Assembly (NCBI GenBank): GCA_951804945.1
Contig: OX638165.1
Span: 41,168,001 to 41,232,000 of the forward strand
Length of the DNA stretch: 64,000 nucleotides
Direction: 5' to 3'
DNA from: Podarcis cretensis
Taxonomy: Eukaryota
Position 1 is the first letter of the stretch. Each line of letters opens with the position of its first letter. The notes beneath the pieces are model-generated. The model made no database searches. It saw only the letters and a program-made list of their open reading frames with translations, and was not told where the DNA came from. The position numbers were made by a program, and so were the translations under genes. This document shows positions 39,001 through 54,000 of the stretch, one piece after another.

Positions 39001-42000
39001 TTATATGGGAGGAAGTGCAAGAGAAGATTCTAATTAAGGATTAGCCCGATTGGGGACAAGAAGACTGTCCTATACTTTGGTTTGGATTTTGGATTTGGCC
39101 TCTCCTTTTCTCCTTTGAAGTTATTAAAAGGAGATAATCTGACAACTTACCTATCTGGGTACCCCTTCTCTCAAAAGTCACCCCTCCCTACATACTATAT
39201 TTTTCTTTTTTCTTTTTTTTTACCAATTTAAAATCATTCACTACTACTCTACTCCCTATTTTACTCCCTACTCTACTCCCTACTTTTTTGGAAGTGACAT
39301 ATCATAAATCAAAAATTGAAATTAATTGTTTAAAGTGTATCAGCTGAATTTGGTATACAATAATTGACTATTGGCTAATTTAATGAACAGGGTTTTGTAC
39401 TGTATAGCAGTTTGGTGAAGGATTGGGGAGGGAGGTTGTAGAAGGTAGAAATGGCACACCAACAGAAGAAAGGGATGGAGGGGGTGACACCGACAGAAAG
39501 GAGAGCATCTAAGCAAGAATCAGACTTCAAAGCAGAAATATTGAAAATGTTTGCAGAAATTAAACAAAGTAAAAAGAATCTGGAAACAAAATTAGAGCAA
39601 GTGGATAGAAAAATTGGCGAAATGGACAAAAAAATTGATGAGACGGTCAATGAACTGAAAGGACAAATAAGAGAGGTTTCAAAAAGAACTTTATCATTGG
39701 AAGAAGGGATGAAAAAGGTTAAATTAGAAATGAAAGAGGTGAAACGGGAAGAAAAGAAGATGAAAGTGGAGATGATGGAAATAAGTAAAGCACAGGAAGA
39801 TATTAAAGATGCGATGGCTATGAATGAACTGAGACAGAGGGAGGTGAATCTAAGGCTGAGATCTGTGCCGGAGATACAGAACAAAGATATTAAAGAGAGA
39901 TTGATAATGGAGTTAGCGCAATGGCTGGAGTTACCAGCAGAAGTTGTAAAAACAGTACAAAGTACATTTAAAATGAAAGTAAGATCAAACAAAGCAAGGA
40001 AATTTCCAGGGGACTGTTTAATTACATTTAAAGACAGAGGAATGAGAAATTTGATATTACAGAAAAACAGAGAGAAAAGATTATACATAGATGGAAATTA
40101 CATAATCATTTTTAAAGATATACCAATAAGATTGCTGAAACGAAGAGACCCATACAAGCCATTGGTACAGATTCTTAAGAAAAACAAAATTGATTTTAAG
40201 TGGGAATTCCCTGAGGGAGTCTCGTTTTTCTACAAAAGTAAGAAGCACAGGTTGACAAGCCCAGAAGAAACAGGGAAATTTTTGAGAAAATACAAGGAAC
40301 TAAAAGCAGAAGAGGAAGAAGACAAAGGTGCAGAAGGAGGAGCAGGATCTAAGGAAGAGTCAGAATCGGGGGAGGAAAAAGAAGAGAACGTAAAGAAGTC
40401 GGATGAAGAGGTAGAAGAAGAAGAAGGAGAAAAAAAGGATACGTTATAAGAAAATTAATTTAATTTTATTTAATTGGAATCCATCATGGCGCTAAAATTA
40501 TGGAATTGGAATATTAATGGGATGAATGATAAGAAAAAATGAAATAAAATTGAACAATTTTTGAAAAAGAAAAATTTGGACATTATATGTTTACAAGAAA
40601 CACACGTGGCAAGGAAACAGAAAAATACTGGTTAATAAAAGATTAGGGAATGAATTTGTATCTTTGGACAAAGAAAAAAAAGGGGGGTAGTTCTATATAT
40701 CAAAAATAAAATCGAATCTCAACAAATCCTTAAAGACGAAGAAGGAAGAATTATAGCAGTCCAGATCAAATGGCAAGGTGAAAATTTGATAATTGTCGGG
40801 ATCTATGCACCTAATGGAAACAAGACTGATTTCTACAAAATCTTGGAAGAAAAACTATTTGATTATATGGATCAAAAAATTATAATAATGGGAGACATGA
40901 ACGGAGTGGTTTCATTAGAAATGGACAGACTAAGAAAAGGAACAAATAAGGAAGGGAAACTACCTAAGACTTTTTTTATGATGACTAAGAACTGCGGTTT
41001 GATTGACATTTGGAGACTTAGACACCCATTGGAGAAGCAATTTACTTATTATTCGGAACCAAATCAGTCAATGTCAAGAATACAGTGGTGCCCCGCAAGA
41101 CGAATGCCTCGCTAGACGAAAAACGCGCAAGACGAAAGGGTTTTTCGTTTCTTGAGTTGCTTCGCAAGACGAATTTCCCTATGGGCTTGCTTTGCAAGAC
41201 GAAAACGTCTTGCGGGTTTGCTTCCTTTTTCTTAAAGCCATTAATACCCAGGGAATCCGCGCTCCGCAAGACGAAAAAATCGCAAGACGAAGCAACTTGC
41301 GGAACAAATTAACTTCGTCTTGCGAGGCACCACTGTAGATCAAATATGGGTTTCGAATGAACTAACACCAAGAATCCAACAAATTGAAATACAACCTAAA
41401 GTAATTTCGGATCATAATCCAATAAAAATGGAATTAAAAGGTTTTGAGGAAAGGACTTATAGATGGAGAATCAATGAACACCTATTAGATGATCAGCAAA
41501 CTCTAGAAAAAGCACAAAAGAAACTAACGGAATATTTTGTGGACAATATCAACAAAGGGACAAAGATGAATGTGGTCTGGGACGCAAGCAAAGCAGTTAT
41601 GAGAGGCTTTTTCATTCAGCAGAATTAATTGAGGAATAAAAATAGAGGAAAAGGAAAAAAAGAAATTTTGAAGCAGATTATGGACAATGAACAAAAACTA
41701 ATTAGAAAACCAAATAACCTAAAAATTAAACAAGAAATCAAGACCTTACAAACTCAATTTGCAATGATAATAAACAAAGAAGTGGAATGGAACATAAAAA
41801 GGTTGAGACAGAAAAACTTCGAATTTGCTAACAAATCAGGCAAATGGTTAGCATGGCAAATTAAAAAGAGAAAGGAACGAAACACAATTAATAAAATCAT
41901 TGTAAATGGTGAAGAGATAGTTAATCTGAAAGAAATCAGAAAAGGATTCTTGGACTTTTATAGACAATTATATAAAAATAAAGAAAGGAACAATATAAAG

Positions 42001-45000
42001 AAAATAGAAAGATTTTTAAAAGAAAAAAAGGTGCAGAAGATCCCGACAGAACAAAAAGACCAGCTGAATGCCCCAGTAGAAATGGACGAGATAAAAGAGA
42101 CTATACAACGGTTGGGAGGAATGTTTTTGCCAAAAATCTCAGAAACCTCATCAGGAGGGCTTTAAACTGACTAATGTGGGGGAGGGAGACAGTGCTCCTG
42201 AAGGTAGGAGTCTATCAATTGATGAAGATGATCCTCCAGATGTCATAGACCAAATGGAGCAAACAGCACGCAGACCTAGTGGTGGGAGGAAAAAAACCTT
42301 AGATAAGAGACACGGGGGAATGATTAATGGACTTCAATGCCTGTACACTAATGCGCAAAGCATGGGAAATAAACAAGATGAGCTTGAGCTCTTGGTACAG
42401 CAAACTAAATATGACATAATAGGCATCACTGAAACCTGGTGGGATAAGTCCCACGATTGGAATGTAATAATGGAGGGATACAATTTATTTCAGAGAAACA
42501 GACCAGACAAGAAAGGAGGAGGAGTGGCGTTATATGTCAGGGATGTGTATACCTGTAAAGAGATCCAAGATTTAGAACCTCAAAGCCAAAGTGAGAGCAT
42601 TTGGGTCAAAATTAAGGGAGAGAAGAATAACAGGGACCTCATTGTGGGAGTTTACTATAGATCCCCAAGCCAAACGGAGGACACAGATGATGCCTTCCTG
42701 GAACAGATGGCCAAGCATGCAAAAGGAAGAGAGTAGTAATGGGGGACTTCAATTACCCAGATATTTGCTGGATGTCAAACTCAGCCAAGAGCATAAGGTC
42801 AAACAGATTCCTCACTGGCCTTGCAGACAACTTCGTTGTCCAGAAAGTGGGAGAAGCAACAAGAGGAACAGCCATTTTAGATCTGGTCCTAACCAATGTT
42901 GATGACCTGGTTAGTGGGGTAGAAGTGGAAGGATCATTAGGCGCGAGTGATCATGCTCTTCTGAAGTTTACTATACAGCAGAAAGGAGCAGCCAAGCATA
43001 CTAGGACTCAATTTCTTGACTTTAAGAAAGCCGACTTCATAAAACTTAGGGAAGTGCTGTGTGAGATCCCATGGACAGTAATACTAAAAGGAAAGGGAGT
43101 TCATGATGGCTGGGAGTTTGTTAAGAGGGAGATAGTAAAAGCACAACTTCAGGCAATACCAATGAGACGGAAACATGGAAGGTGCCTAAAGAAGCCAGGG
43201 TGGCTATCTAAAGAACTTTTAACTGAGTTAAGTTTAAAAAAGGATGTGTACAAAAAATGGAAAAGGGGGGAAACCACCAAAGAGGAATTCAAACAAATAG
43301 CCAGCACGTGTAGACACAAAGTCAGAAAAGCTAAAGCACAGAATGAACTCAGGCTTGCTAGAGAGGTTAAAAGCAACAAAAAAGGCTTTTATGGGTATGT
43401 TCGTAGCAAAAGGAAGAACAAAGAAACAGTGGGGTTACTCAGAGGAGAAGATGGTGAAATGCAAACAGGGGACACAGAAAGGGCTGAACTCCTCAATGCC
43501 TTCTTTGCCTCAGTCTTCTCCGATAAAGAAAACAATGCCCGACCTGAAGAATTTGGAGCAAATGATTCAGCAGAGGAAACACAGCCCAGAATAACTAAGG
43601 AGATAGTACAAGAATGCTCGGCTAGTCTAGATGTATTCAAGTCTCCAGGGCCAGATGAACTGCATCCAAGAGTATTAAAAGAACTGGCAGATGTGATCTC
43701 AGAACCACTGGCAGTCATCTTTGAGAATTCCTGGAGAACAGGCAAAGTCCCGGCAGACTGGAGGAGGGCAAATGTTGTCCCTATTTTCAAAAAGGGGAAA
43801 GGAGAGGACCCAAATAATTACCGCCCAGTCAGTCTGACATCAATACCAGGGAAGATTCTGGAACAGATCATTAAGCAAACAGTCTGTGAGCACCTAGAAA
43901 GGAATGCTGTGATCACTAATAGTCAGCATGGATTTCTGAAAAATAAGTCATGTCAGACTAACCTGATCTCGTTTTTTGACAGAATTACAAGCCTGGTAGA
44001 TGAAGGGAACGCAGTGGATGTAGCCTACTTTGATTTCAGCAAGGCATTTGACAAGGTGCCCCATGATATTCTTGTAAAGAAGCTGGTAAAATGCGGACTT
44101 GACTATGCTACCACTCAGTGGATTTGTAACTGGCTGACTGACCGAACCCAAAGGGTGCTCATCAATGGTTCCTCTTCATCCTGGAGAAGAGTGACTAGTG
44201 GGGTGCCACAGGGTTCTGTCTTGGGCCCGGTCTTATTCAACATCTTTATCAACGACTTGGATGATGGACTCAAGGGCATCCTGATCAAATTTGCAGATGA
44301 CACCAAACTGGGAGGGGTGGCTAACACCCCAGAGGACAGGAACACACTTCAAAACGACCTTGACAGATTAGAGAACTGGGCCAAAACAAACAAGATGAAT
44401 TTTAACAGGGAGAAATGTAAAGTATTGCACTTGGGCAAAAAAAATGAGAGGCACAAATACAAGATGGGTGACAACTGGCTTGAGAGCAGTACATGTGAAA
44501 AGGATCTAGGAGTCTTGGTTGACCACAGACTTGACATGAGCCAACAGTGTGACGCGGCAGCTAAAAAAGCCAATGCAATTCTGGGCTGCATCAATAGGAG
44601 TATAGCATCTAGATCAAGGGAAGTAATAGTGCCACTGTATTCTGCTCTGGTCAGACCTCACCTGGAGTACTGTGTCCAGTTCTGGGCACCACAGTTCAAG
44701 AAGGACACTGACAAACTGGAACGTGTCCAGAGGAGGGCAACCAAAATGGTCAAAGGCCTGGAAACGATGCCTTATGAGGAACAGCTAAGGGAGCTGGGCA
44801 TGTTTAGCCTGGAGAAGAGGAGGTTAAGGGGTGATATGATAGCCATGTTCAAATATATAAAAGGATGTCACATAGAGGAGGGAGAAAGGTTGTTTTCTGC
44901 TGCTCCAGAGAAGCAGACACGGAGCAATGGCTCCAAACTACAAGAAAGAAGATTCCACCTAAACATTAGGAAGAACTTCCTGACAGTAAGAGCTGTTCGA

Positions 45001-48000
45001 CAGTGGAATTTGCTGCCAAGGAGTGTGGTGGAGTCTCCTTCTTTGGAGGTCTTTAAGCAGAGGCTTGACAACCATATGTCAGGAGTGCTCTGATGGTGTT
45101 TCCTGCTTGGCAGGGGGTTGGACTCGATGGCCCTTGTGGTCTCTTCCAACTCTATGATTCTATGATTCTATGAAAAGAATTGAAGAGAGGAAAGGCCCCG
45201 GGACCAGATGGATTTACATCAGGTTATTACAAAGAAATGAGAGATGTATTGTCGACACCATTGAAAGAAGTTATGAATAATATTTTAAAAGAAAGAGAGA
45301 TCCCAGATACATGGAAAAAAACATTTATTACCTTGATTCCAAAACAAGATTCGGATTTAACACAAGTCAAAAACTATAGGCCTATTTCATAATTGAATAC
45401 GGATTACAAAATATTTGCAGGGATTTTAGCGAAGAGAATGAAAAAGATATTGTTGAAAATCATCCATAAAGATCAAGCAGGTTTCCTTCCAGGCAGACAA
45501 ATGAAAGATAATATAAGGAATATAATTAATATTTTGGAATATCTGACTGCCAGGAATGAGAAACAAGCGATATTAATGTTTGTGGACGCAGAAAAGGCCT
45601 TCGACAATATAGTATGGGATTTTATGCTGAAAAATTTAGAGTACATGGATGTGGGGAAAGAGTTCTTCAATGGAATTAAGGCAATATACACAGAACAGAG
45701 AGCTGAACTGCTAGTCAATAATGTAATTACAGAGGATATAAAAATATCAAAAGGAACAAGACAGGGTTGTCCGCTCTCGCCATTATTATTTATAACGGTC
45801 CTAGTGGTCTTTTTAAGTGCGATTAGACAAAATAAATCAATTAAAGGGGTAACAGTGGGGCAGAATGAATATAAAGTGAAAGCCTTTGCCGATGATCTGG
45901 TTATAACGATTGAAGAACCACTGGAAAGTGTAAAAGAAGTTTTGGAGGAAATAGAACAATTTGGAAAAATGGCAGGATTTAGATTGAATAAGAAAAAGAC
46001 TAAAATAATTGCTAAAAATATGGAACAAAATAAGATAGAAATAATGCAACAACAGACAGAGATAAAGGTTGTGAAAAAAGTAAAATATTTGGGGATTTGG
46101 TTAACACCCAATAATATTGACCTGTTCCAGAATAATTATGTACCGGTTTGGAAGGAAATAAGGAAAGATCTAGGGGTGTGGGGCAGAATGAAACTGTCCT
46201 TTTGGGGCAGAATTTCCACAATAAAGATGAGTGTGCTTCCAAAGATGTTATTTTTATTTCAGACTATCCCCATTATAAAAGGGATAGGGATCTTTAAAGA
46301 GTGGCAAAAAGTGATTTCAAGGTATATCTGGCAGGGCAAGAAGCCAAGAATAAAATATAAGTTATTAACAGATGCGAAAGAAAGAGGAGGCTTCGCCCTG
46401 CCAGATATGAAACTATATTATGAAGCAGCATGTCTTTGCTGGTTAAAAGAATGGATAAAATTAGACAATAAGGAATTATTAGACCTTGAAGGTTTTGATA
46501 ACAGATTTGGATGACATGCTTACCTATGTTGTGATAAGAAGAAAATTCATAAAGGTTTTGGGAACCACATCTTCAGGAATTCGTTGATAGAGGTATGGGA
46601 CAGGTACAAAAATTTATTGGAACCAAAAGTTCCACACTGGCTATCTCCGTTAGAAGTTATGAGTGTAAAGAAAATTAATATGAGAGGTAATTGGATCACA
46701 TATGGTGAAATGGTGATTAAAGAGGAGGGAAAATGGAAGTTAAAGCCATATGAACAAATTAAAGAACATGTATATGATTGGTTGCATTATTTACAGGTTA
46801 ATGAAATGTTTTAAAAAGACATAAAAGAATGTGGATATGGAGAAAAAGATTCAAAGTTTCAAGTAGATATAATAAATAATGAATGTAATTTTTTTTCAAA
46901 AATGTATAAAATACTGTTGGAATGGAACATGAAAGATGAAGAGGTTAAATCGGCAATGATACAATGGGCCAAAGACTTCGGTTATAATATACAATTTGAC
47001 GATTGGGAAAAATTGTGGAAAGAAAATCTGAAATTTACTGCATGTACTGCGTTGAAGGAAAATGTTATGAAAATGTTTTACAGATGGTATATCACGCCGG
47101 TAAAATTAGCAAAAATGTATAAGACATGTAATAAGTGTTGGAAATGTAAAAAAAAAGAAGGAACATTTTACCATATGTGGTGGGAATGTAAGAAGCTGAA
47201 AGGTTTCTGGGATGCAATTTATAATGAATTGAAAAAGATGTTAAAATTTACTTTTGTGAAGAAACCAGAAGCCTTTCTTTTAGGAATTACAGGAAAAGAA
47301 ATAAGAAGAAAAGACTGTAAACTCTTTCAGTATGCAGTTACAGCGGCAAGGATTTTATTGGCTCAAAAATGGAAACAAGAGGAATTACCGACAATAGAAG
47401 AATGGAGATTGAAATTGACAGACTATGCGGAATTGGACAAATTAACTGGGAAAATCAGATATGCCCAAGACCAAAGGTTCATCGAAGACTGGGGAAAGTT
47501 TGTAGAGTATCTGAAAAATGTATGCGATATACAAACAACGCTAGTGGGGTTTCTAGAGGCGTTGTAAAAACTGAGAGATATTGTTAAAAAAGAAATAGAA
47601 GGGAGAGGGAAGACAAACGGCAATATATGTAAATAGAATGCGTAATTAAGAGATAAACATGGATGATTGCCAGAGAAGCTGAAGGAAGTCCAAAAGAGAT
47701 GTTTTGTTACAATTTGGTTAAAAATGTATAAATGTATTGGAAAATTAATAAAAATCTATTTAAAAATAAAAAGCAATCTTTTGTTGATTAATTGGGGGTT
47801 GCCTTTGCAGTTGATTAAAAAGATTTCTAAATAAATTAGCTGTACCAATTAATTGTTTAATGTTGCACACAAATGCACACTAACTTTCATTGTAATAGTG
47901 TTACATTTATTTCTTGAAACCTGCCAAGTTTCCTTAGACTCTGTAGGGAGCCTTTCTCCAACAATTTCTTCACTGATCTCCAAATCATAACAGTCTGGAA

Positions 48001-51000
48001 GAGTGGTCATTGCATTATCTTCTCTGCCATGCTACACTTTCAAACAGAGCTGGCCTAGCAATTAGGCAGCAGAAGTGCTCCCAGGTGGCACCACCACCAT
48101 TAATGCCAATTTTGGGCAAGATTGTGTCCATTTTGTGTGAGATCTCACACAATTTTGGGTAAGATCTTACAGAGAATTGGTGCAATCATGCCCCAAATTG
48201 GCACCAATGGCAGTACCACTTCTCCGCCAGTGTCAGATGTGGCAGGATGTGTAGTGGCAGCAGAACAGACCGTGGTGGCAGGAGCAGGTGGCTGGGGGCA
48301 GGAGTGGCTGTGCAAAGTAGCACTTTTCACTTTGCTTCAGGCGGTGAAACAGGACATTTTGCCCTTGCTTGCAAGCTGCTTTCTACATTGAAGAAAATCC
48401 TTTGCTGGTCTGCTCATAGAATGTAATAATGAAACACCTTCCAAGACCTTGCTCATCTCTCTTCTTCAGTTCCAGATTTGTTTTTAGTGTTGCTCTCCAC
48501 TTGGTGCCCCCTTTAAAGACAGTTTATAGCAGTGTGTTGCAGGGGAGGGGAGAGGCGCCAAAAGATTTTCACCAATATAGTATTTGTTGCTTTGTGATTT
48601 CATATGGCAGGTGACACAGTTGACCAAGATGCTGGATGCTCTCCTTGAGCAAGAATATGATGACCCTGATGTGCTCGAGTGCTACTTCCTTGAAGCTCTA
48701 TATTCTTCTTTAGGAGCCTGCCTCCTTGAAGCTGGAAGATCAAAATTTGATGACTTTATCAAACGTCTCTCCTCTATGTCAACTGTTAATGATGAGATGA
48801 CTCTAGCTAAACCAGGAGAGTTGCCAGGTAGGATATAATCAGTCTTGTATGACATGGTTTGTTTCTGAAAGGAATTCCTAGGTACTGCAGCTTCACTTGC
48901 CTTCTGCAGTTCAGCACGTATCCCACAATGAAGATTTTCCTGCTCCTGCTCCCAAGCTGCTATTAGCACAACTGAGGGGAAAATACAGGCCACTGTATTT
49001 CTCTTAGCCTGCCTAATAGCAGCCTCTGAGAGATGACTCAGATTTGAGGAATGACATCAATCCACTTGACCCATGAGGGCATAGGTGGCAACTATCCAAG
49101 GCTTACAGATAGTTCTACTCTATGAGCTAAGAGCTCAGCCTTCCAGGGCCCACCAAGAAGCATAGCAGCAAAGCAAGCTTATTAGCATATATCAAAGCAA
49201 GTGCATAGATAAACACATGTAAACTCATCCTTGCAAAACTAGCAATTAGTTTTGGGGTTATACTGACTAGTCTCGCCTTTGGTTCAACACAGGGGTACAC
49301 ATCCTTTACAGTGGCTGAATAGGGCTTTGCTGCAAGCCAAGTGAAAAACTCTGAAACCCATGCCTTTTCTGTTTAGCCCTGTGGCACTGAGGGAGTTTCA
49401 TCTTGGTAATTTTTACCTTCCTTGAACTATGCTACGCAGCATAGAGACAGGACTTGGGGGGCTGCTGAGTAAGGACTTCAGTTCTTTGAAGTAAATAAGA
49501 AATGTTAATAGATTTTTCAGACAATTGTTATGTAAAGTAGAACATATTCTGTTTCTGCTTGATTACTTACTGAAACTGAGTTTCCTTCAATGGAAACTTC
49601 ATGATCTACACTGAGTCACATGGCACTGTCTATGGAGCAAGTAGGAAAAAGAACCTGTCTCAGGATAACCCTATAATAATAATAAAAAGATTTGTTGCAC
49701 TTAGTATGATATCTTCTCCTCAGTGGATTAAGGTTATGTCCTACCCTTGGAACCCCAGGCAGGTGCAGTAGGTTCCCAAGGGAGGAAGTAGAGTCCCTGA
49801 ACCATAAGGACATTCTGCCTGAAACAGGTGCTTTACAACAGTAATATTGAGAGCATAAAATTCATACTAAGGCCAAGGTATACACATACATTATCTGCCA
49901 ATCTTTTGGGCCTAATTCTAGTGCTTTCTGATAATTTGGACAATGTGTTCAGCATGTTGCTTTGCATACTATACTGGATGTCTCATTTGCAACATACCTC
50001 CAGTAATCATGAATGACTAATCTCTGACCATAAGTATGGTCTAAGCTATCATAATTGATTTATCTTCAGGCCAGCTTCCAACTTTATATGACTTTCACTT
50101 TGAGGGACTGATGAAAAAGTGGGTGCCTTGGAGCAAATTGGTCCCTGAATATATCCACTCACCCGAAGTGAAATTTATCGATATTCTGGGTAAGTGTGAC
50201 TAAAGCTTTGCATAATTTAGTGGGAGTAATTAATGTCACAAGTTAATCAATTGCAGCTTGCAAACCTATTTATGCCTTGTCCAGTACATGAGAGGCATCC
50301 TTACATGGCTCATCTTCGTTGATCATCCCTGGGAGGCAGGATCACATGACAACATCTTGTAGCTCTAAGCTGGCTCAGGAGGCTCCACCCCAGTTACTGC
50401 CTTGCCTTGCCCAAGTTCAGAGCAGATTCCTTTACTTAGTGTTTCTACCACCAGTTTCTTCGTATCTGTAGCTTTCTTGCTACCTGTTTTTCCTTAGAGT
50501 CCCTTCTCTAAGGAGAGCCAGTGTGGTGTAGTGGTTAAGAGCGGTAGATTCATAATCTGGGGAACCGGGTTCGCTTCCCCGCTCCTCCACCTGCAGCTGC
50601 TGGGTGACCTTGGGCTAGTCACACTTCTCTGAAGTCTCTCAACCGCACTCACCTCACAGAGTGTTTGTTGTGGGGGAGGAAGGGGAAGGAGAATGTTAGC
50701 CGCTTTGAGACTCCTTCGGGTAGTGATAAAGCGGGATATCAAATCCAAACTTGTCTTTTTCTTCTTCTCACGTTCTGGTGACCCTCCATCATCATCACCA
50801 CCACCATCATCATCCTGTCTTTAGTCTGTCACCTTCAGCCCTTCAATATAAGGAGTGGACATGTCCCATTTCTGGATGTCTTCCTTCCACTGAACAGAAC
50901 AAACATTGGTCACTTACCATGAAAGTTCCTCTGATTCATAGAGTTATCCAGCTTATCCTCTTTAGGTAGCATACTACAAATGGGTACAGCTTGGTCTACC

Positions 51001-54000
51001 CAAATGACCATGGTTTGGCCACCCTGTACTTTCATCCACTTCTGCTTGGCCTTCTCAGAGGAAGCTTCTGTTATTTTCTTTTAATGTTCCCCCCGCCTCA
51101 GATTTAGTTTACATGTGCTGTTCTCTGCTTGACTGTGGAGCCTCCTGAGCCAGTCTAGGCATACGAAACATCACCACATGAGACTTGACTTTCCTGGGCT
51201 ATGGGTGGAGACAACCCATCTCTGGATATCTCCCTAAGACTGGGCAATAAGGGTTAGGGTTAGGGTTTAGTCGATATTTTAGATTGTAAAATGCTGTTTT
51301 ATCTATTGATTTGTTTTACCTTGTGGGCTTATAGCCGAATAAAGTATTATCTATCTGGGCAATAAGGGGCCAATGCTCCATTCTAAAATAGTGTGTCTAG
51401 AAACATTTTTCTTTTATCCTCTAAGCTGCTAGAGGAACAAACGACCCCTGGATCAGACAATGGGTCTTGTGTCTCTAAATGAATTCTCTACTGGAGTGAT
51501 TGTGCATTGAGTATCTATGCAAATCTATCATATCTATGCAAATCTATCATTTTAAAGCTGCTTGGTTTTCTTTTGCTCTCTGTATTCCAAGTTAACATAC
51601 ACACTCTTTAGTTCCCACAGTGGACACAACCCGTACAAACTGGCTACTAGAAAAGATGGTAAAAATCAAACACCCCGTTGTTCTGGTTGGAGAATCTGGA
51701 ACCTCAAAGACGGCAACAACACAGAACTTTCTTAAGAAACTAAATCAAGACACAAATGTAAGGGTCCAGATTTTATGTAATTAGCCCTACACCTTTACTC
51801 CACTTCCAGATAAGGAAAGAAGCTCATTCTTCTGTTGCAAAAAGGAGAGAAGGAGCAAAAAGCTGAGGGATGAGTATAGGGGACAGATCCTTTGCTGCGC
51901 AGGTCCCCAGAATCTCTGGTTTCATACATACCCCTTTTTGCCTATTTAAGTCATGTCCTATGAGTGTCTACTGAGAAACAACTAGTGTGTTCAGTGAGGT
52001 TTATTGCCCTCAGGTAAATGTGTATAAGTTTGCAGACTTAGTCTGCTCCAGCAATGACTATATTTTAGTATTTTATTAAACAGTATATCCACTTGGCCTG
52101 ACATTTTAAGAGAGAGAATGTATCAAAGTCAGTAAGATGCTTTTAAAAGCAATTTTTAAACTTAGTTATTTATTCTGTAAACTGGTACAAATGTGATAAT
52201 CTTCCACAAATCAATAGAACATTAGAATGATTCAGATTTTAGATTAATGTCCTTTGTTGTTTAGAAATTTTTTTAGAGAATTTATGTAAATATTAAATCT
52301 TATTTTTTAAAAATCCTCTTCTATACAGCAGCAGCAGAAGGTTTCCCAAGTTTTCAAATATTACATTTATCTAATATGACTAATATAACTAAATTGCTTC
52401 GTGCATTCTTGACTTATTTGTAGTGTTATTTTTGGTAGTGTTATTTGTAGTGTGAATTTTCTAAACCATTTTATATTTTTCAAAAATCTACCTGATATCA
52501 TTGCCCTTGAACTAGTCACCCTCTCTCATGCAAACGTACCTCACAAGGGTGCTGCAATGATAAAATGGAAGGTGATAATGTATGCCACCCTGAAATCCTT
52601 GGAGGAAGGATAGGATAAACATGTAAATAAATAAAAGTAACTAATCTGAGACATTCTTATTACCATAATCTCCTATACCTTGCCTGTCCACAAAACTGTT
52701 CTTTTCGAGAACTGAGTGCTAACATATTTTTGCTGCCATCAATCAGAAACACTGAAATGCATCTGTAAATCACAATTCCCCAGTAAGTGGAGAAATACTA
52801 CTGGGATTGTGTCTACTTCCTGAAATTAATATATTCTCTGTAATGATAGAGACACTCTGTTTTAATTTAACTATCACATATATAATCCCTTCTCAGCTTT
52901 TTACCTCTGCCTGCTGAGTAGGAAGTCCTTGGCATGAGCCTTCATTTCCCAATAACTCATTTTTAATCTTCCACTTCCAGGTGCTGCTTATCATTAACTT
53001 CTCCTCTCGCACTACCTCCATGGATATTCAAAGGAATATGGAAGCAAACGTGGAGAAACGGACCAAAGAGACCTATGGTCCCCCAATGGGAAAGCGCCTC
53101 ATTGTCTTTATGGATGATATGAACATGCCCAGGGTAAGAATATACATACAAGTATGCAAGAACATCTCAAGACACATTCAAGCATTTTTAATGGAGCTGA
53201 TGCCGGGAAGGGAATGCTTTGCATCCTTTGTTTCTGAAGAAACTTACATGTGTAAGAGGTGCTATTCTGGATCAGACCAAGGGTTCATTTAATCCAGGAC
53301 CCTAACTGTAGTCAACTATATGCCAAGGGAAGCTCACAGACAGTGATATAATAGCAGTGCCCTGTGGTTTGCCCCCAGCTTCTAGCAATCAAAGAACACC
53401 GCCTCTATCACAAAAGGTTCCATTGGGCTAGTCATGGCTATTGTCATTGGAGTACTCACAATATAAATCAGGCTCTGAGTAAACCCATTAAAGGATATGA
53501 CTAATTTAGGTCCATTAGTCTTGATCTGAGTGGAATTTAGCTGGTTACAACTAATTGTCCAACATGTTTTCTGTTAACTTACTGTGATTCAGCCTTCCTT
53601 TGCATGATGCTCTCCAGATGTTTTGGACTGCAGCTCCCATCAACTCCAGCCAGCATGTCCAGTGGTCAGAGATGATGGAAGTTATAATGCAGAACATCTG
53701 GAAGGTTGGTCTACTCCTTCTACAGAACCATCAAAGCTTGCAGCAAACAACTTGGGTGTAAGAGGAAGGCACTGTACCTTCTTGTTGCAGTCATTGTTTA
53801 TTTTCTGTCACCTGATAGAAAATGTACCTGGTATATTTGTAAAAGAGAGCCCATGCAACTTAGTGGTCAGATTGTCAGACTAGAACTTGAGCGACAAAGG
53901 TTCTGTTCTCTGGGTGACATTGGGTCTATCATTCTCTCATAGGAAAAAGAGAAAACCTGTCACAGGACAGATGGAAAACCCATGTATGTTGTCCTGAGCT

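What the first reader, a model, noticed from the sequence alone, without database searches (positions are those of the whole stretch)
51240..51368. Telomeric repeats, in telomerase register, forming the 5' junction of a TSD-flanked LINE insertion
Seen: a perfect 14-bp direct repeat CTGGGCAATAAGGG (51240-51253 and 51355-51368) brackets a 101-bp insert. The insert is TTAGGG TTAGGG TTTAG (51254-51270), then a T-rich LINE-type 3'UTR with a GGCT-TAT-AGCC mini-hairpin, AATAAAG and a TATC tail. The left TSD ends in TAAGGG, one base from TTAGGG. Known: the vertebrate telomerase template (3'-CAAUCCCAAUC-5') pairs with a primer ending AGGG, adds TTAG, then GGTTAG units, and stops at TTAG. That is the register seen here apart from one extra T. 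Inference: the upper-strand 3' overhang of a target-primed reverse transcription break was extended by telomerase and then joined to a severely 5'-truncated cDNA, so two reverse transcriptases built one insertion. If recurrent, this would be a telomerase-assisted 5'-joining route for this LINE family.
Basis: partly seen in the sequence, partly recalled or inferred. Interest (0 to 1): 0.8.

Follow-up and report, generated by a model that had tools for sequence, protein, structure and literature searches.

The report
Telomere repeats inside a young LINE insertion
A very recent jumping-gene insertion in this lizard-like genome carries two perfect telomere repeats at its truncated front end; they came in with the insertion, perhaps written by telomerase, but one locus cannot prove that.

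Summary
A perfect 14-bp duplication (51240-53, 51355-68) brackets a 101-bp insert.

Contigs of four other genomes all carry the empty site, with one copy of the 14-mer and no TTAGGG. One of them has flanks identical to the window, so the insertion is very young or polymorphic.

The right-hand 89 nt (51266-51354) are the 3' end of a high-copy, 5'-truncated retroposon family on the + strand with an (ATCT)n tail. The family reads GCGTTGAAATAT upstream of 51266, not TTAGGG. The foreign filler is therefore exactly TTAGGGTTAGGG (51254-65). The upstream duplication does end in AGGG, in register.

Telomerase extension of the 14-nt 3' overhang is my preferred mechanism, at about 0.45. I could not exclude two rivals: a template switch to a UUAGGG-repeat RNA, or a source RNA that already carried the repeats.

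None of seven other truncated copies seen has a telomeric junction. One unchecked scan note (s1-836713) reports a second such case in this genome, on other DNA.

It is a new variant of known kinds: telomeric-repeat insertion at breaks, and LINE 5' extra nucleotides.

The parts
51240..51253 (+). Upstream target-site duplication CTGGGCAATAAGGG. Its last four bases, AGGG, are in register with the telomeric filler. In the target-primed model this is the 14-nt 3' overhang of the top strand.
   Evidence: A single copy is present at the empty site in X15 and X1 (table 5: skips 115, 'both' = 14).
51254..51265 (+). Filler of exactly two perfect TTAGGG units. It is absent from the empty site and from the family consensus.
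   Evidence: In one search the family contigs start matching at 51266, with GCGTTGAAATAT before that point, and no contig of the four runs covers 51240-51265.
51266..51354 (+). 89-nt 5'-truncated 3' end of a high-copy non-LTR retroposon family. The first two bases (TT) are ambiguous between the telomeric tract and the LINE. Contains the hairpin at 51326-36, AATAAA at 51338-43 and the tail TATCTAT at 51348-54. G at 51296 is private; all family contigs read A there.
   Evidence: Summed word depth rises from 17 in the flank to 833, 2966, 13567 and 17160 toward 51358. Contigs end in unrelated flanks at 51353-56 or continue as ATCT repeats.
51355..51368 (+). Downstream target-site duplication. Its first two bases (CT) also match the family's (ATCT)n tail, giving priming microhomology for the bottom-strand nick.
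   Evidence: In one search table 7, family matches run to 51356 and then continue as ATCT...

Best explanation
**Shown.** One recent target-primed retrotransposition event put an 89-nt 3' fragment of a microsatellite-tailed retroposon into a CTGGGCAATAAGGG target. It made a 14-bp duplication. It brought in exactly two TTAGGG units between the upstream duplication and the truncated 5' end.

**Inferred sequence of steps.**
1. The bottom strand was nicked between 51239 and 51240. Its ...CAG-3' end primed on the ...AUCU tail through CT/AG microhomology.
2. The top strand was cut 14 nt downstream, leaving a single-stranded 3' overhang ending ...TAAGGG-3'.
3. Telomerase aligned on AGGG and added TTAG, then GGTTAG, then GG(TT).
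4. The extended end annealed by 0-2 nt (TT) to the 3' end of the truncated cDNA and primed second-strand synthesis.
For: - **Single event, shown:** the duplications are perfect. All four other genomes carry the empty site, including X15 with no differences over 686 flanking bases.
- **Orientation and family, shown:** the + strand pile-up rises toward 51354-56, with an ATCT-repeat tail and diverse flanks beyond it.
- **Filler is foreign, shown:** high-depth family contigs of organisms G and A read GCGTTGAAATAT before 51266.
- **Not chance:** a random 12-mer is telomeric in the given strand in any of the six registers with probability 3.6e-7. AGGG at the overhang end has probability about 0.003.
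- **No local template:** TTAGGGTTAGGG occurs nowhere else in the window.
- **Precedent:** short telomeric tracts are inserted at germ-line breaks, with strong excess of in-register bases (AGGG among the examples) at the break's 3' end. Some come with target duplications or with extra non-telomeric sequence (PMC2246262; PMC7215372).
Against: - Only one locus was examined.
- None of seven other 5' junctions of this family seen is telomeric.
- The tract ends mid-repeat (GGG, GGGT or GGGTT), not at the TTAG pause that established knowledge of vertebrate telomerase predicts.
- AGGG microhomology is equally expected if a cDNA ending in CCCTAA repeats annealed to the overhang.
- The genome is reported to hold many hAT MITEs with TTAGGG units (unchecked notes). 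UUAGGG-bearing RNAs may therefore be common.
- The private G at 51296 hints at an unusual source copy.
- No telomerase-RNA-derived sequence lies next to the repeats (Rfam blank at E up to 10).
Confidence: 0.45

Rival explanations
1. Template switch. The LINE reverse transcriptase left the LINE RNA at the position matching 51266 and copied about 12-16 nt of a UUAGGG-repeat RNA. That RNA could be TERRA, or a transcript through an interstitial telomeric tract or a TTAGGG-bearing MITE. The CCCTAA-ended cDNA then annealed to the AGGG end of the top-strand overhang.
For: It gives the same orientation (TTAGGG in LINE sense) and the same AGGG microhomology as observed. Chimeric retrocopies made by a switch to other nuclear RNAs are established (U6/L1; cited in PMC2246262). 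Unchecked notes report many TTAGGG-carrying hAT MITEs in this genome.
Against: The acceptor segment would have to lie wholly within perfect repeats, with no non-telomeric bases. I found no paper reporting TERRA-LINE chimeras in the library searched. Known switch chimeras usually copy the acceptor RNA over a long stretch.
Confidence: 0.25
2. The RNA template already carried the repeats. The source could be a minor subfamily, or a truncated copy lying just downstream of a telomeric tract and transcribed through it. It could also be a LINE with a TTAGGG microsatellite elsewhere plus an internal deletion. Reverse transcription ran into the repeats and was joined at AGGG microhomology.
For: The window copy has G at 51296 where every family contig in four genomes reads A (table 3). 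That suggests an atypical source. Only the 12 nt just upstream of 51266 are known for the family, and the rest of the element was not seen.
Against: No laid contig in the four genomes shows the TTAGGG|TTTAG junction, and X9 has zero depth over 51251-77. That listing was truncated, so this is weak evidence. The high-depth consensus upstream of 51266 is non-telomeric in two organisms.
Confidence: 0.17
3. Repair filler. A fragment of telomeric double-stranded or extrachromosomal DNA was captured by end joining at the 5' junction, or a repair polymerase made the filler.
For: Extra nucleotides at 5' junctions are common for some LINEs, about half of ZfL2-2 copies in zebrafish (PMC4245944). Capture of telomeric fragments was considered for interstitial telomeric tracts (PMC2246262).
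Against: Blunt capture does not predict the 4-nt in-register AGGG (probability about 0.003). No local CCCTAACCCT template exists for templated filler synthesis. The single CCCTAA at 51232-37 would, by snap-back, template AGATAT..., not TTAGGG.
Confidence: 0.08
4. The element lies on the minus strand and ends in a CCCTAA-repeat tail, as in telomere-associated retroelements. Alternatively, the feature is an assembly artefact or a pre-existing telomeric tract.
For: Read on the minus strand, the insert ends in CTAAACCCTAACCCTAA next to the duplication.
Against: The family pile-up rises toward 51354-56, with a common end there and an ATCT tail. Other copies are truncated at 51312-51324 from the left. 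The empty site lacks any telomeric tract. The perfect duplication and the genuine family 3' end argue against an artefact.
Confidence: 0.03

Closest known systems
Short interstitial telomeric sequences inserted at germ-line double-strand breaks, attributed to telomerase (Nergadze et al. 2007, PMC2246262; Santagostino et al. 2020, PMC7215372)
   Same: Perfect TTAGGG units appear suddenly relative to an empty orthologous or allelic site. [quoted passage not shown] Some loci have target duplications or co-inserted non-telomeric sequence. Insertion polymorphism is described in horse.
   Different: Here the break is a LINE target-primed intermediate with a 14-bp stagger. The co-inserted sequence is a retroposon 3' end. 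The tract is only two added units, whereas those surveys searched with (TTAGGG)4. No telomerase-RNA fragment is present.
LINE 5' extra nucleotides and microhomology-mediated 5'-end joining (Yamaguchi, Kajikawa and Okada 2014, PMC4245944, and works cited there)
   Same: Non-element bases sit between the upstream duplication and a truncated 5' end. Short microhomologies are present at the joins.
   Different: The filler here is 12 nt of perfect telomeric repeat, not a few seemingly random bases.
Chimeric retrocopies by reverse-transcriptase template switching (U6/L1 type; from my own knowledge and the citation in PMC2246262)
   Same: Two RNA-derived segments in the same orientation lie inside one pair of duplications, with the LINE 3' part downstream.
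   Different: The upstream segment is only 12 nt and purely repetitive, so no donor RNA can be identified.
Endonuclease-independent L1 insertion at dysfunctional telomeres (Morrish et al. 2007, cited) and telomere-specific LINEs (TRAS/SART)
   Same: LINE sequence is physically joined to telomeric repeats.
   Different: Those use an existing telomeric array as target or primer, and the repeats abut the LINE 3' end or flank both sides. Here the target has no array and the repeats sit at the 5' junction.
Squamate LINEs with microsatellite 3' tails (Pasquesi et al. 2018, PMC6050309)
   Same: The family ends in a tetranucleotide microsatellite, (ATCT)n, the complement of (AGAT/ATAG)n.
   Different: The clade of this family (CR1-L3, Rex, L1, RTE) was not determined, because only its last 100 nt or so were seen.

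Membership tests
5'-truncated non-LTR retroposon insertion by target-primed reverse transcription | Perfect target-site duplication flanking the insert, with a single copy at the empty site | tested here: met
   In one search table 5, X15 and X1 skip 115 nt with 14 shared bases.
5'-truncated non-LTR retroposon insertion by target-primed reverse transcription | The insert's 3' end coincides with the common 3' end of a dispersed family, and copy depth falls toward the 5' side | tested here: met
   tables 2, 7 and 8: depth runs 17160, 13567, 2966, 833 from right to left. Unrelated flanks follow 51353-56, and other copies start at 51312-51324.
5'-truncated non-LTR retroposon insertion by target-primed reverse transcription | A full-length family member encodes endonuclease and reverse transcriptase | not tested
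   There is no longer copy in the window. Collections of vertebrate genomes were not available, and two metagenome scans were blank.
Telomerase-mediated insertion of telomeric repeats at a break (short interstitial telomeric sequence) | Exact TTAGGG hexamers present at the filled site and absent from the empty site | tested here: met
Telomerase-mediated insertion of telomeric repeats at a break (short interstitial telomeric sequence) | [quoted passage not shown] | tested here: met
   The duplication ends in AGGG, with TTAGGG next. TRF finds a perfect tract at 51250-67. This feature does not exclude annealing of a CCCTAA-ended cDNA.
Telomerase-mediated insertion of telomeric repeats at a break (short interstitial telomeric sequence) | Tract of at least four hexamers (the operational search criterion of the published surveys) | tested here: not met
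   Two units were added, or 3.0 units counting shared bases. The published method is given in PMC2246262.
Telomerase-mediated insertion of telomeric repeats at a break (short interstitial telomeric sequence) | Synthesis depends on telomerase and its RNA template | not testable with these tools
   This needs a template-mutant or knockout assay. No telomerase-RNA match lies next to the repeats.
Template-switch chimeric retrocopy | The upstream segment is identifiable as a copy of a specific cellular RNA | tested here: inconclusive
   12 nt of pure repeat fit TERRA or any UUAGGG-bearing transcript, but identify none.
Telomere-targeting LINE, or endonuclease-independent insertion at telomeric DNA | The target is a telomeric repeat array | tested here: not met
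   The empty site in four genomes holds no array.

The most novel reading that the evidence does not exclude
In this lizard lineage, telomerase recurrently extends the top-strand 3' overhang of LINE integration intermediates. LINE endonuclease breaks would then be a regular source of new interstitial telomeric repeats, and telomerase would provide a 5'-joining route. The second, unchecked case in the same genome (note s1-836713) would be another product of it.
Probability: 0.15. Interest if true: 0.75.

Novelty: new variant of a known kind. Interest (0 to 1): 0.5.

Why it matters
If telomerase wrote the repeats, this is a natural, dated, insertion-polymorphic example of two reverse transcriptases acting on one break. 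It would link two literatures: the origin of interstitial telomeric repeats at germ-line breaks, and 5'-end joining of LINEs.

It would also point to LINE endonuclease breaks as one source of the breaks that telomerase 'heals'. Because the empty allele still exists, the event is recent enough to study in populations. The idea can be tested directly with a template-mutant telomerase RNA in a retrotransposition assay.

If the repeats instead came from an RNA, it is a minor curiosity among chimeric retrocopies.

Tried and rejected
- **Minus-strand element with a CCCTAA tail:** rejected by the direction of the family pile-up and its common end at 51354-56.
- **Family consensus holds TTAGGG at this point:** rejected, since GCGTTGAAATAT precedes 51266 in high-depth contigs of two organisms.
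- **Repeats pre-existing at the site:** rejected by four empty sites.
- **Local templated filler or snap-back on CCCTAA at 51232-37:** this would give AGATAT..., not TTAGGG.
- **Telomerase-RNA or known RNA family next to the repeats:** Rfam was blank at gathering score and showed only noise at E up to 10.
- **Structured 3' element:** the fold is not better than shuffles.
- **Other copies in the window:** none found.
- **Family copies in JGI metagenome contigs:** two exact-pattern scans were blank.
- **Literature:** searches for telomeric repeats at LINE 5' junctions found no direct report. The library is incomplete.
- **Scan notes by sequence:** the look-up was blank, which per the operators means nothing.
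- **Not attempted:** fetching full-length LINEs through the protein tools. The yield was expected to be low and the search costly.

Full report
**What is in the sequence**

The 14-mer CTGGGCAATAAGGG stands at 51240-51253 and again at 51355-51368, both copies perfect. It is the only non-tandem direct repeat of 14 nt or more within 300 nt anywhere in the 64-kb window. Block shuffles give 0.145 such repeats on average.

Between the copies lie 101 nt that begin TTAGGGTTAGGG. This is the only such 12-mer in the window. Tandem Repeats Finder sees a perfect 18-nt telomeric tract at 51250-51267. That tract consists of:
- the last four bases of the upstream copy (AGGG);
- twelve filler bases;
- two T that follow.

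The 91-nt stretch 51266-51356 does not fold better than shuffles (z -0.59).

**The empty site**

I found 19 public runs that hold the flanks. I laid the contigs of four of them, from four differently labelled organisms, on 50900-51700. All four have the empty site.

| Run | Organism | Flank differences | Joint | Shared bases |
|---|---|---|---|---|
| X15 | G | 0 in 686 flanking bases | 51239 to 51355, skips 115 nt | 14 |
| X1 | A | 2 substitutions, plus one extra base and the missing 19-bp unit | 51239 to 51355, skips 115 nt | 14 |
| X5 | E | 8 substitutions, plus the same kind of indels | 51234 to 51363, skips 128 nt | 4 |
| X9 | F | 8 substitutions, plus the same kind of indels | 51234 to 51363, skips 128 nt | 4 |

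In X15 and X1 this is one copy of the 14-mer and nothing else. X15 also shares the window's 19-bp tandem duplication at 51512-49. In X5 and X9 the target additionally lacks 13 nt bounded by TAAG repeats.

No contig of any run covers 51240-51265. The best holders carry 0.89 of the sampled words, which fits loss of the insert's words.

The duplication, the telomeric units and the retroposon fragment therefore arrived together. They did so recently enough that a genome with identical flanks lacks them. Contigs can drop an allele, so heterozygosity in X15 is not strictly excluded.

**What the 89 nt are**

Summed word depth is 17 in the X15 flanks. It rises to 833, 2966, 13567 and 17160 across 51251-51358, with the same shape in the other three runs (table 2).

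Family contigs stop matching at 51353-56 and go on into unrelated flanks or into ATCT repeats. Other copies begin at 51312-51324, preceded by unrelated sequence (tables 7, 8). This is the signature of a high-copy, heavily 5'-truncated non-LTR retroposon family on the + strand, with an (ATCT)n tail. Its 3' end abuts the downstream duplication.

The first two bases of the duplication (CT) also match the tail. That is the usual priming microhomology. This refutes my alternative that the element lies on the minus strand with a CCCTAA tail.

Squamate LINEs with microsatellite tails are well known (PMC6050309). The clade of this family was not determined.

**Where the family ends and the filler begins**

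High-depth consensus-like contigs of organisms G and A match from 51266 on and carry GCGTTGAAATAT before it. A contig of organism E also starts matching at 51266. Three things follow:
- TTTAG is LINE sequence.
- The filler is exactly TTAGGGTTAGGG (51254-65).
- The family does not carry TTAGGG at this position.

The tract ends at GGG, GGGT or GGGTT, because the two T are shared. The register at the left side holds: AGGG of the target, then TTAGGG.

**Is it chance?**

A random 12-mer is telomeric in the given strand in any of the six registers with probability 3.6e-7. AGGG at the overhang end has probability about 0.003. Even allowing for the very many junctions read in this scan, chance is not credible.

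No local template exists. The nearby CCCTAA at 51232-37 would, by snap-back, template AGATAT... rather than TTAGGG.

**Mechanism**

The event itself is secure. The bottom strand was nicked between 51239 and 51240. The ...CAG-3' end primed on the AUCU tail. The top strand was cut 14 nt downstream, leaving a 14-nt 3' overhang ending TAAGGG-3'.

For the 12 nt I prefer telomerase, at about 0.45. From established knowledge of the vertebrate template, an overhang ending AGGG aligns on it. TTAG, GGTTAG and GG(TT) are added, and the end then anneals to the truncated cDNA.

The precedent is the work of Nergadze, Santagostino and colleagues. Short telomeric tracts appear at germ-line breaks with a strong excess of in-register bases at the break's 3' end. 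Some come with target duplications or extra sequence, and some are insertion-polymorphic (PMC2246262; PMC7215372).

Three rivals give the same sequence:
- **Template switch (0.25).** The LINE enzyme switches to a UUAGGG-repeat RNA, and the CCCTAA-ended cDNA anneals to AGGG.
- **Chimeric source RNA (0.17).** The source RNA already carried the repeats. The private G at 51296, where all family contigs of four genomes read A, hints at an unusual source.
- **Capture or repair filler (0.08).** This does not predict the register.

**Recurrence**

Seven other 5' junctions of this family visible are non-telomeric, so this is not a family habit.

The scan's notes hold one unchecked first-stage title from another piece of the same genome: 'Telomeric repeats at the 5' junction of a TSD-flanked truncated L1' (s1-836713). 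I could not see that sequence. It is a lead, not support.

Several unchecked notes describe hAT MITEs with TTAGGG units in this genome. These raise the prior for UUAGGG-bearing transcripts.

**Comparison and novelty**

My searches of the paper library found no report of telomeric repeats as the 5' filler of a duplication-flanked LINE insertion. The library is incomplete.

The finding sits between two known kinds: telomeric-repeat insertion at breaks, and LINE 5' extra nucleotides (PMC4245944). I rate it a new variant of a known kind, with interest 0.5. The locus is clean, young and well controlled, and the reading is attractive. The key mechanistic claim cannot be settled from one locus.

**Limits**

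I could not lay the raw reads of the species-labelled 2026 runs, and I could not search the genome for a source copy. Two metagenome scans for family copies were blank.

Noticed in passing
window 51512-51549: A perfect 19-bp tandem duplication (TATCTATGCAAATCTATCA x2). It is present in the window and in run X15 but single-copy in X1, X5 and X9 (table 4), so it is a lineage marker that ties X15 to the window's species.
   Followed up: partly
window 51235-51247 (target site): Organisms E and F lack 13 nt (TAAGACTGGGCAA) at the target. The indel is bounded by 4-nt TAAG repeats (table 5: skips 128, 'both' = 4). The 14-mer target therefore exists only in part of the clade.
   Followed up: partly
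window 51296: The inserted copy has G where every family contig of the four genomes reads A (table 3). This could be a reverse-transcription error, a rare source copy or an assembly error.
   Followed up: no
window 51551-51593: A 43-nt stretch also matches other contigs of X1 and X9 with 8 differences (table 8, records 7 and 28). It is a second, low-copy repeat next to the site.
   Followed up: no
window 41629-47770: Two LINEs lie head to tail. One has endonuclease and reverse-transcriptase ORFs (42176-45093) and ends in (TCTATGAT)n at 45151-73, a CR1-like tail. It is directly followed by a 5'-truncated element with a reverse-transcriptase ORF (45393-46514) and an A-rich end near 47770, which looks L1-like.
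   Followed up: partly
other pieces of the same genome (scan notes): Many first-stage notes describe a young hAT MITE family carrying TTAGGG units. One note describes telomeric repeats at the 5' junction of a truncated L1. All are unchecked.
   Followed up: no
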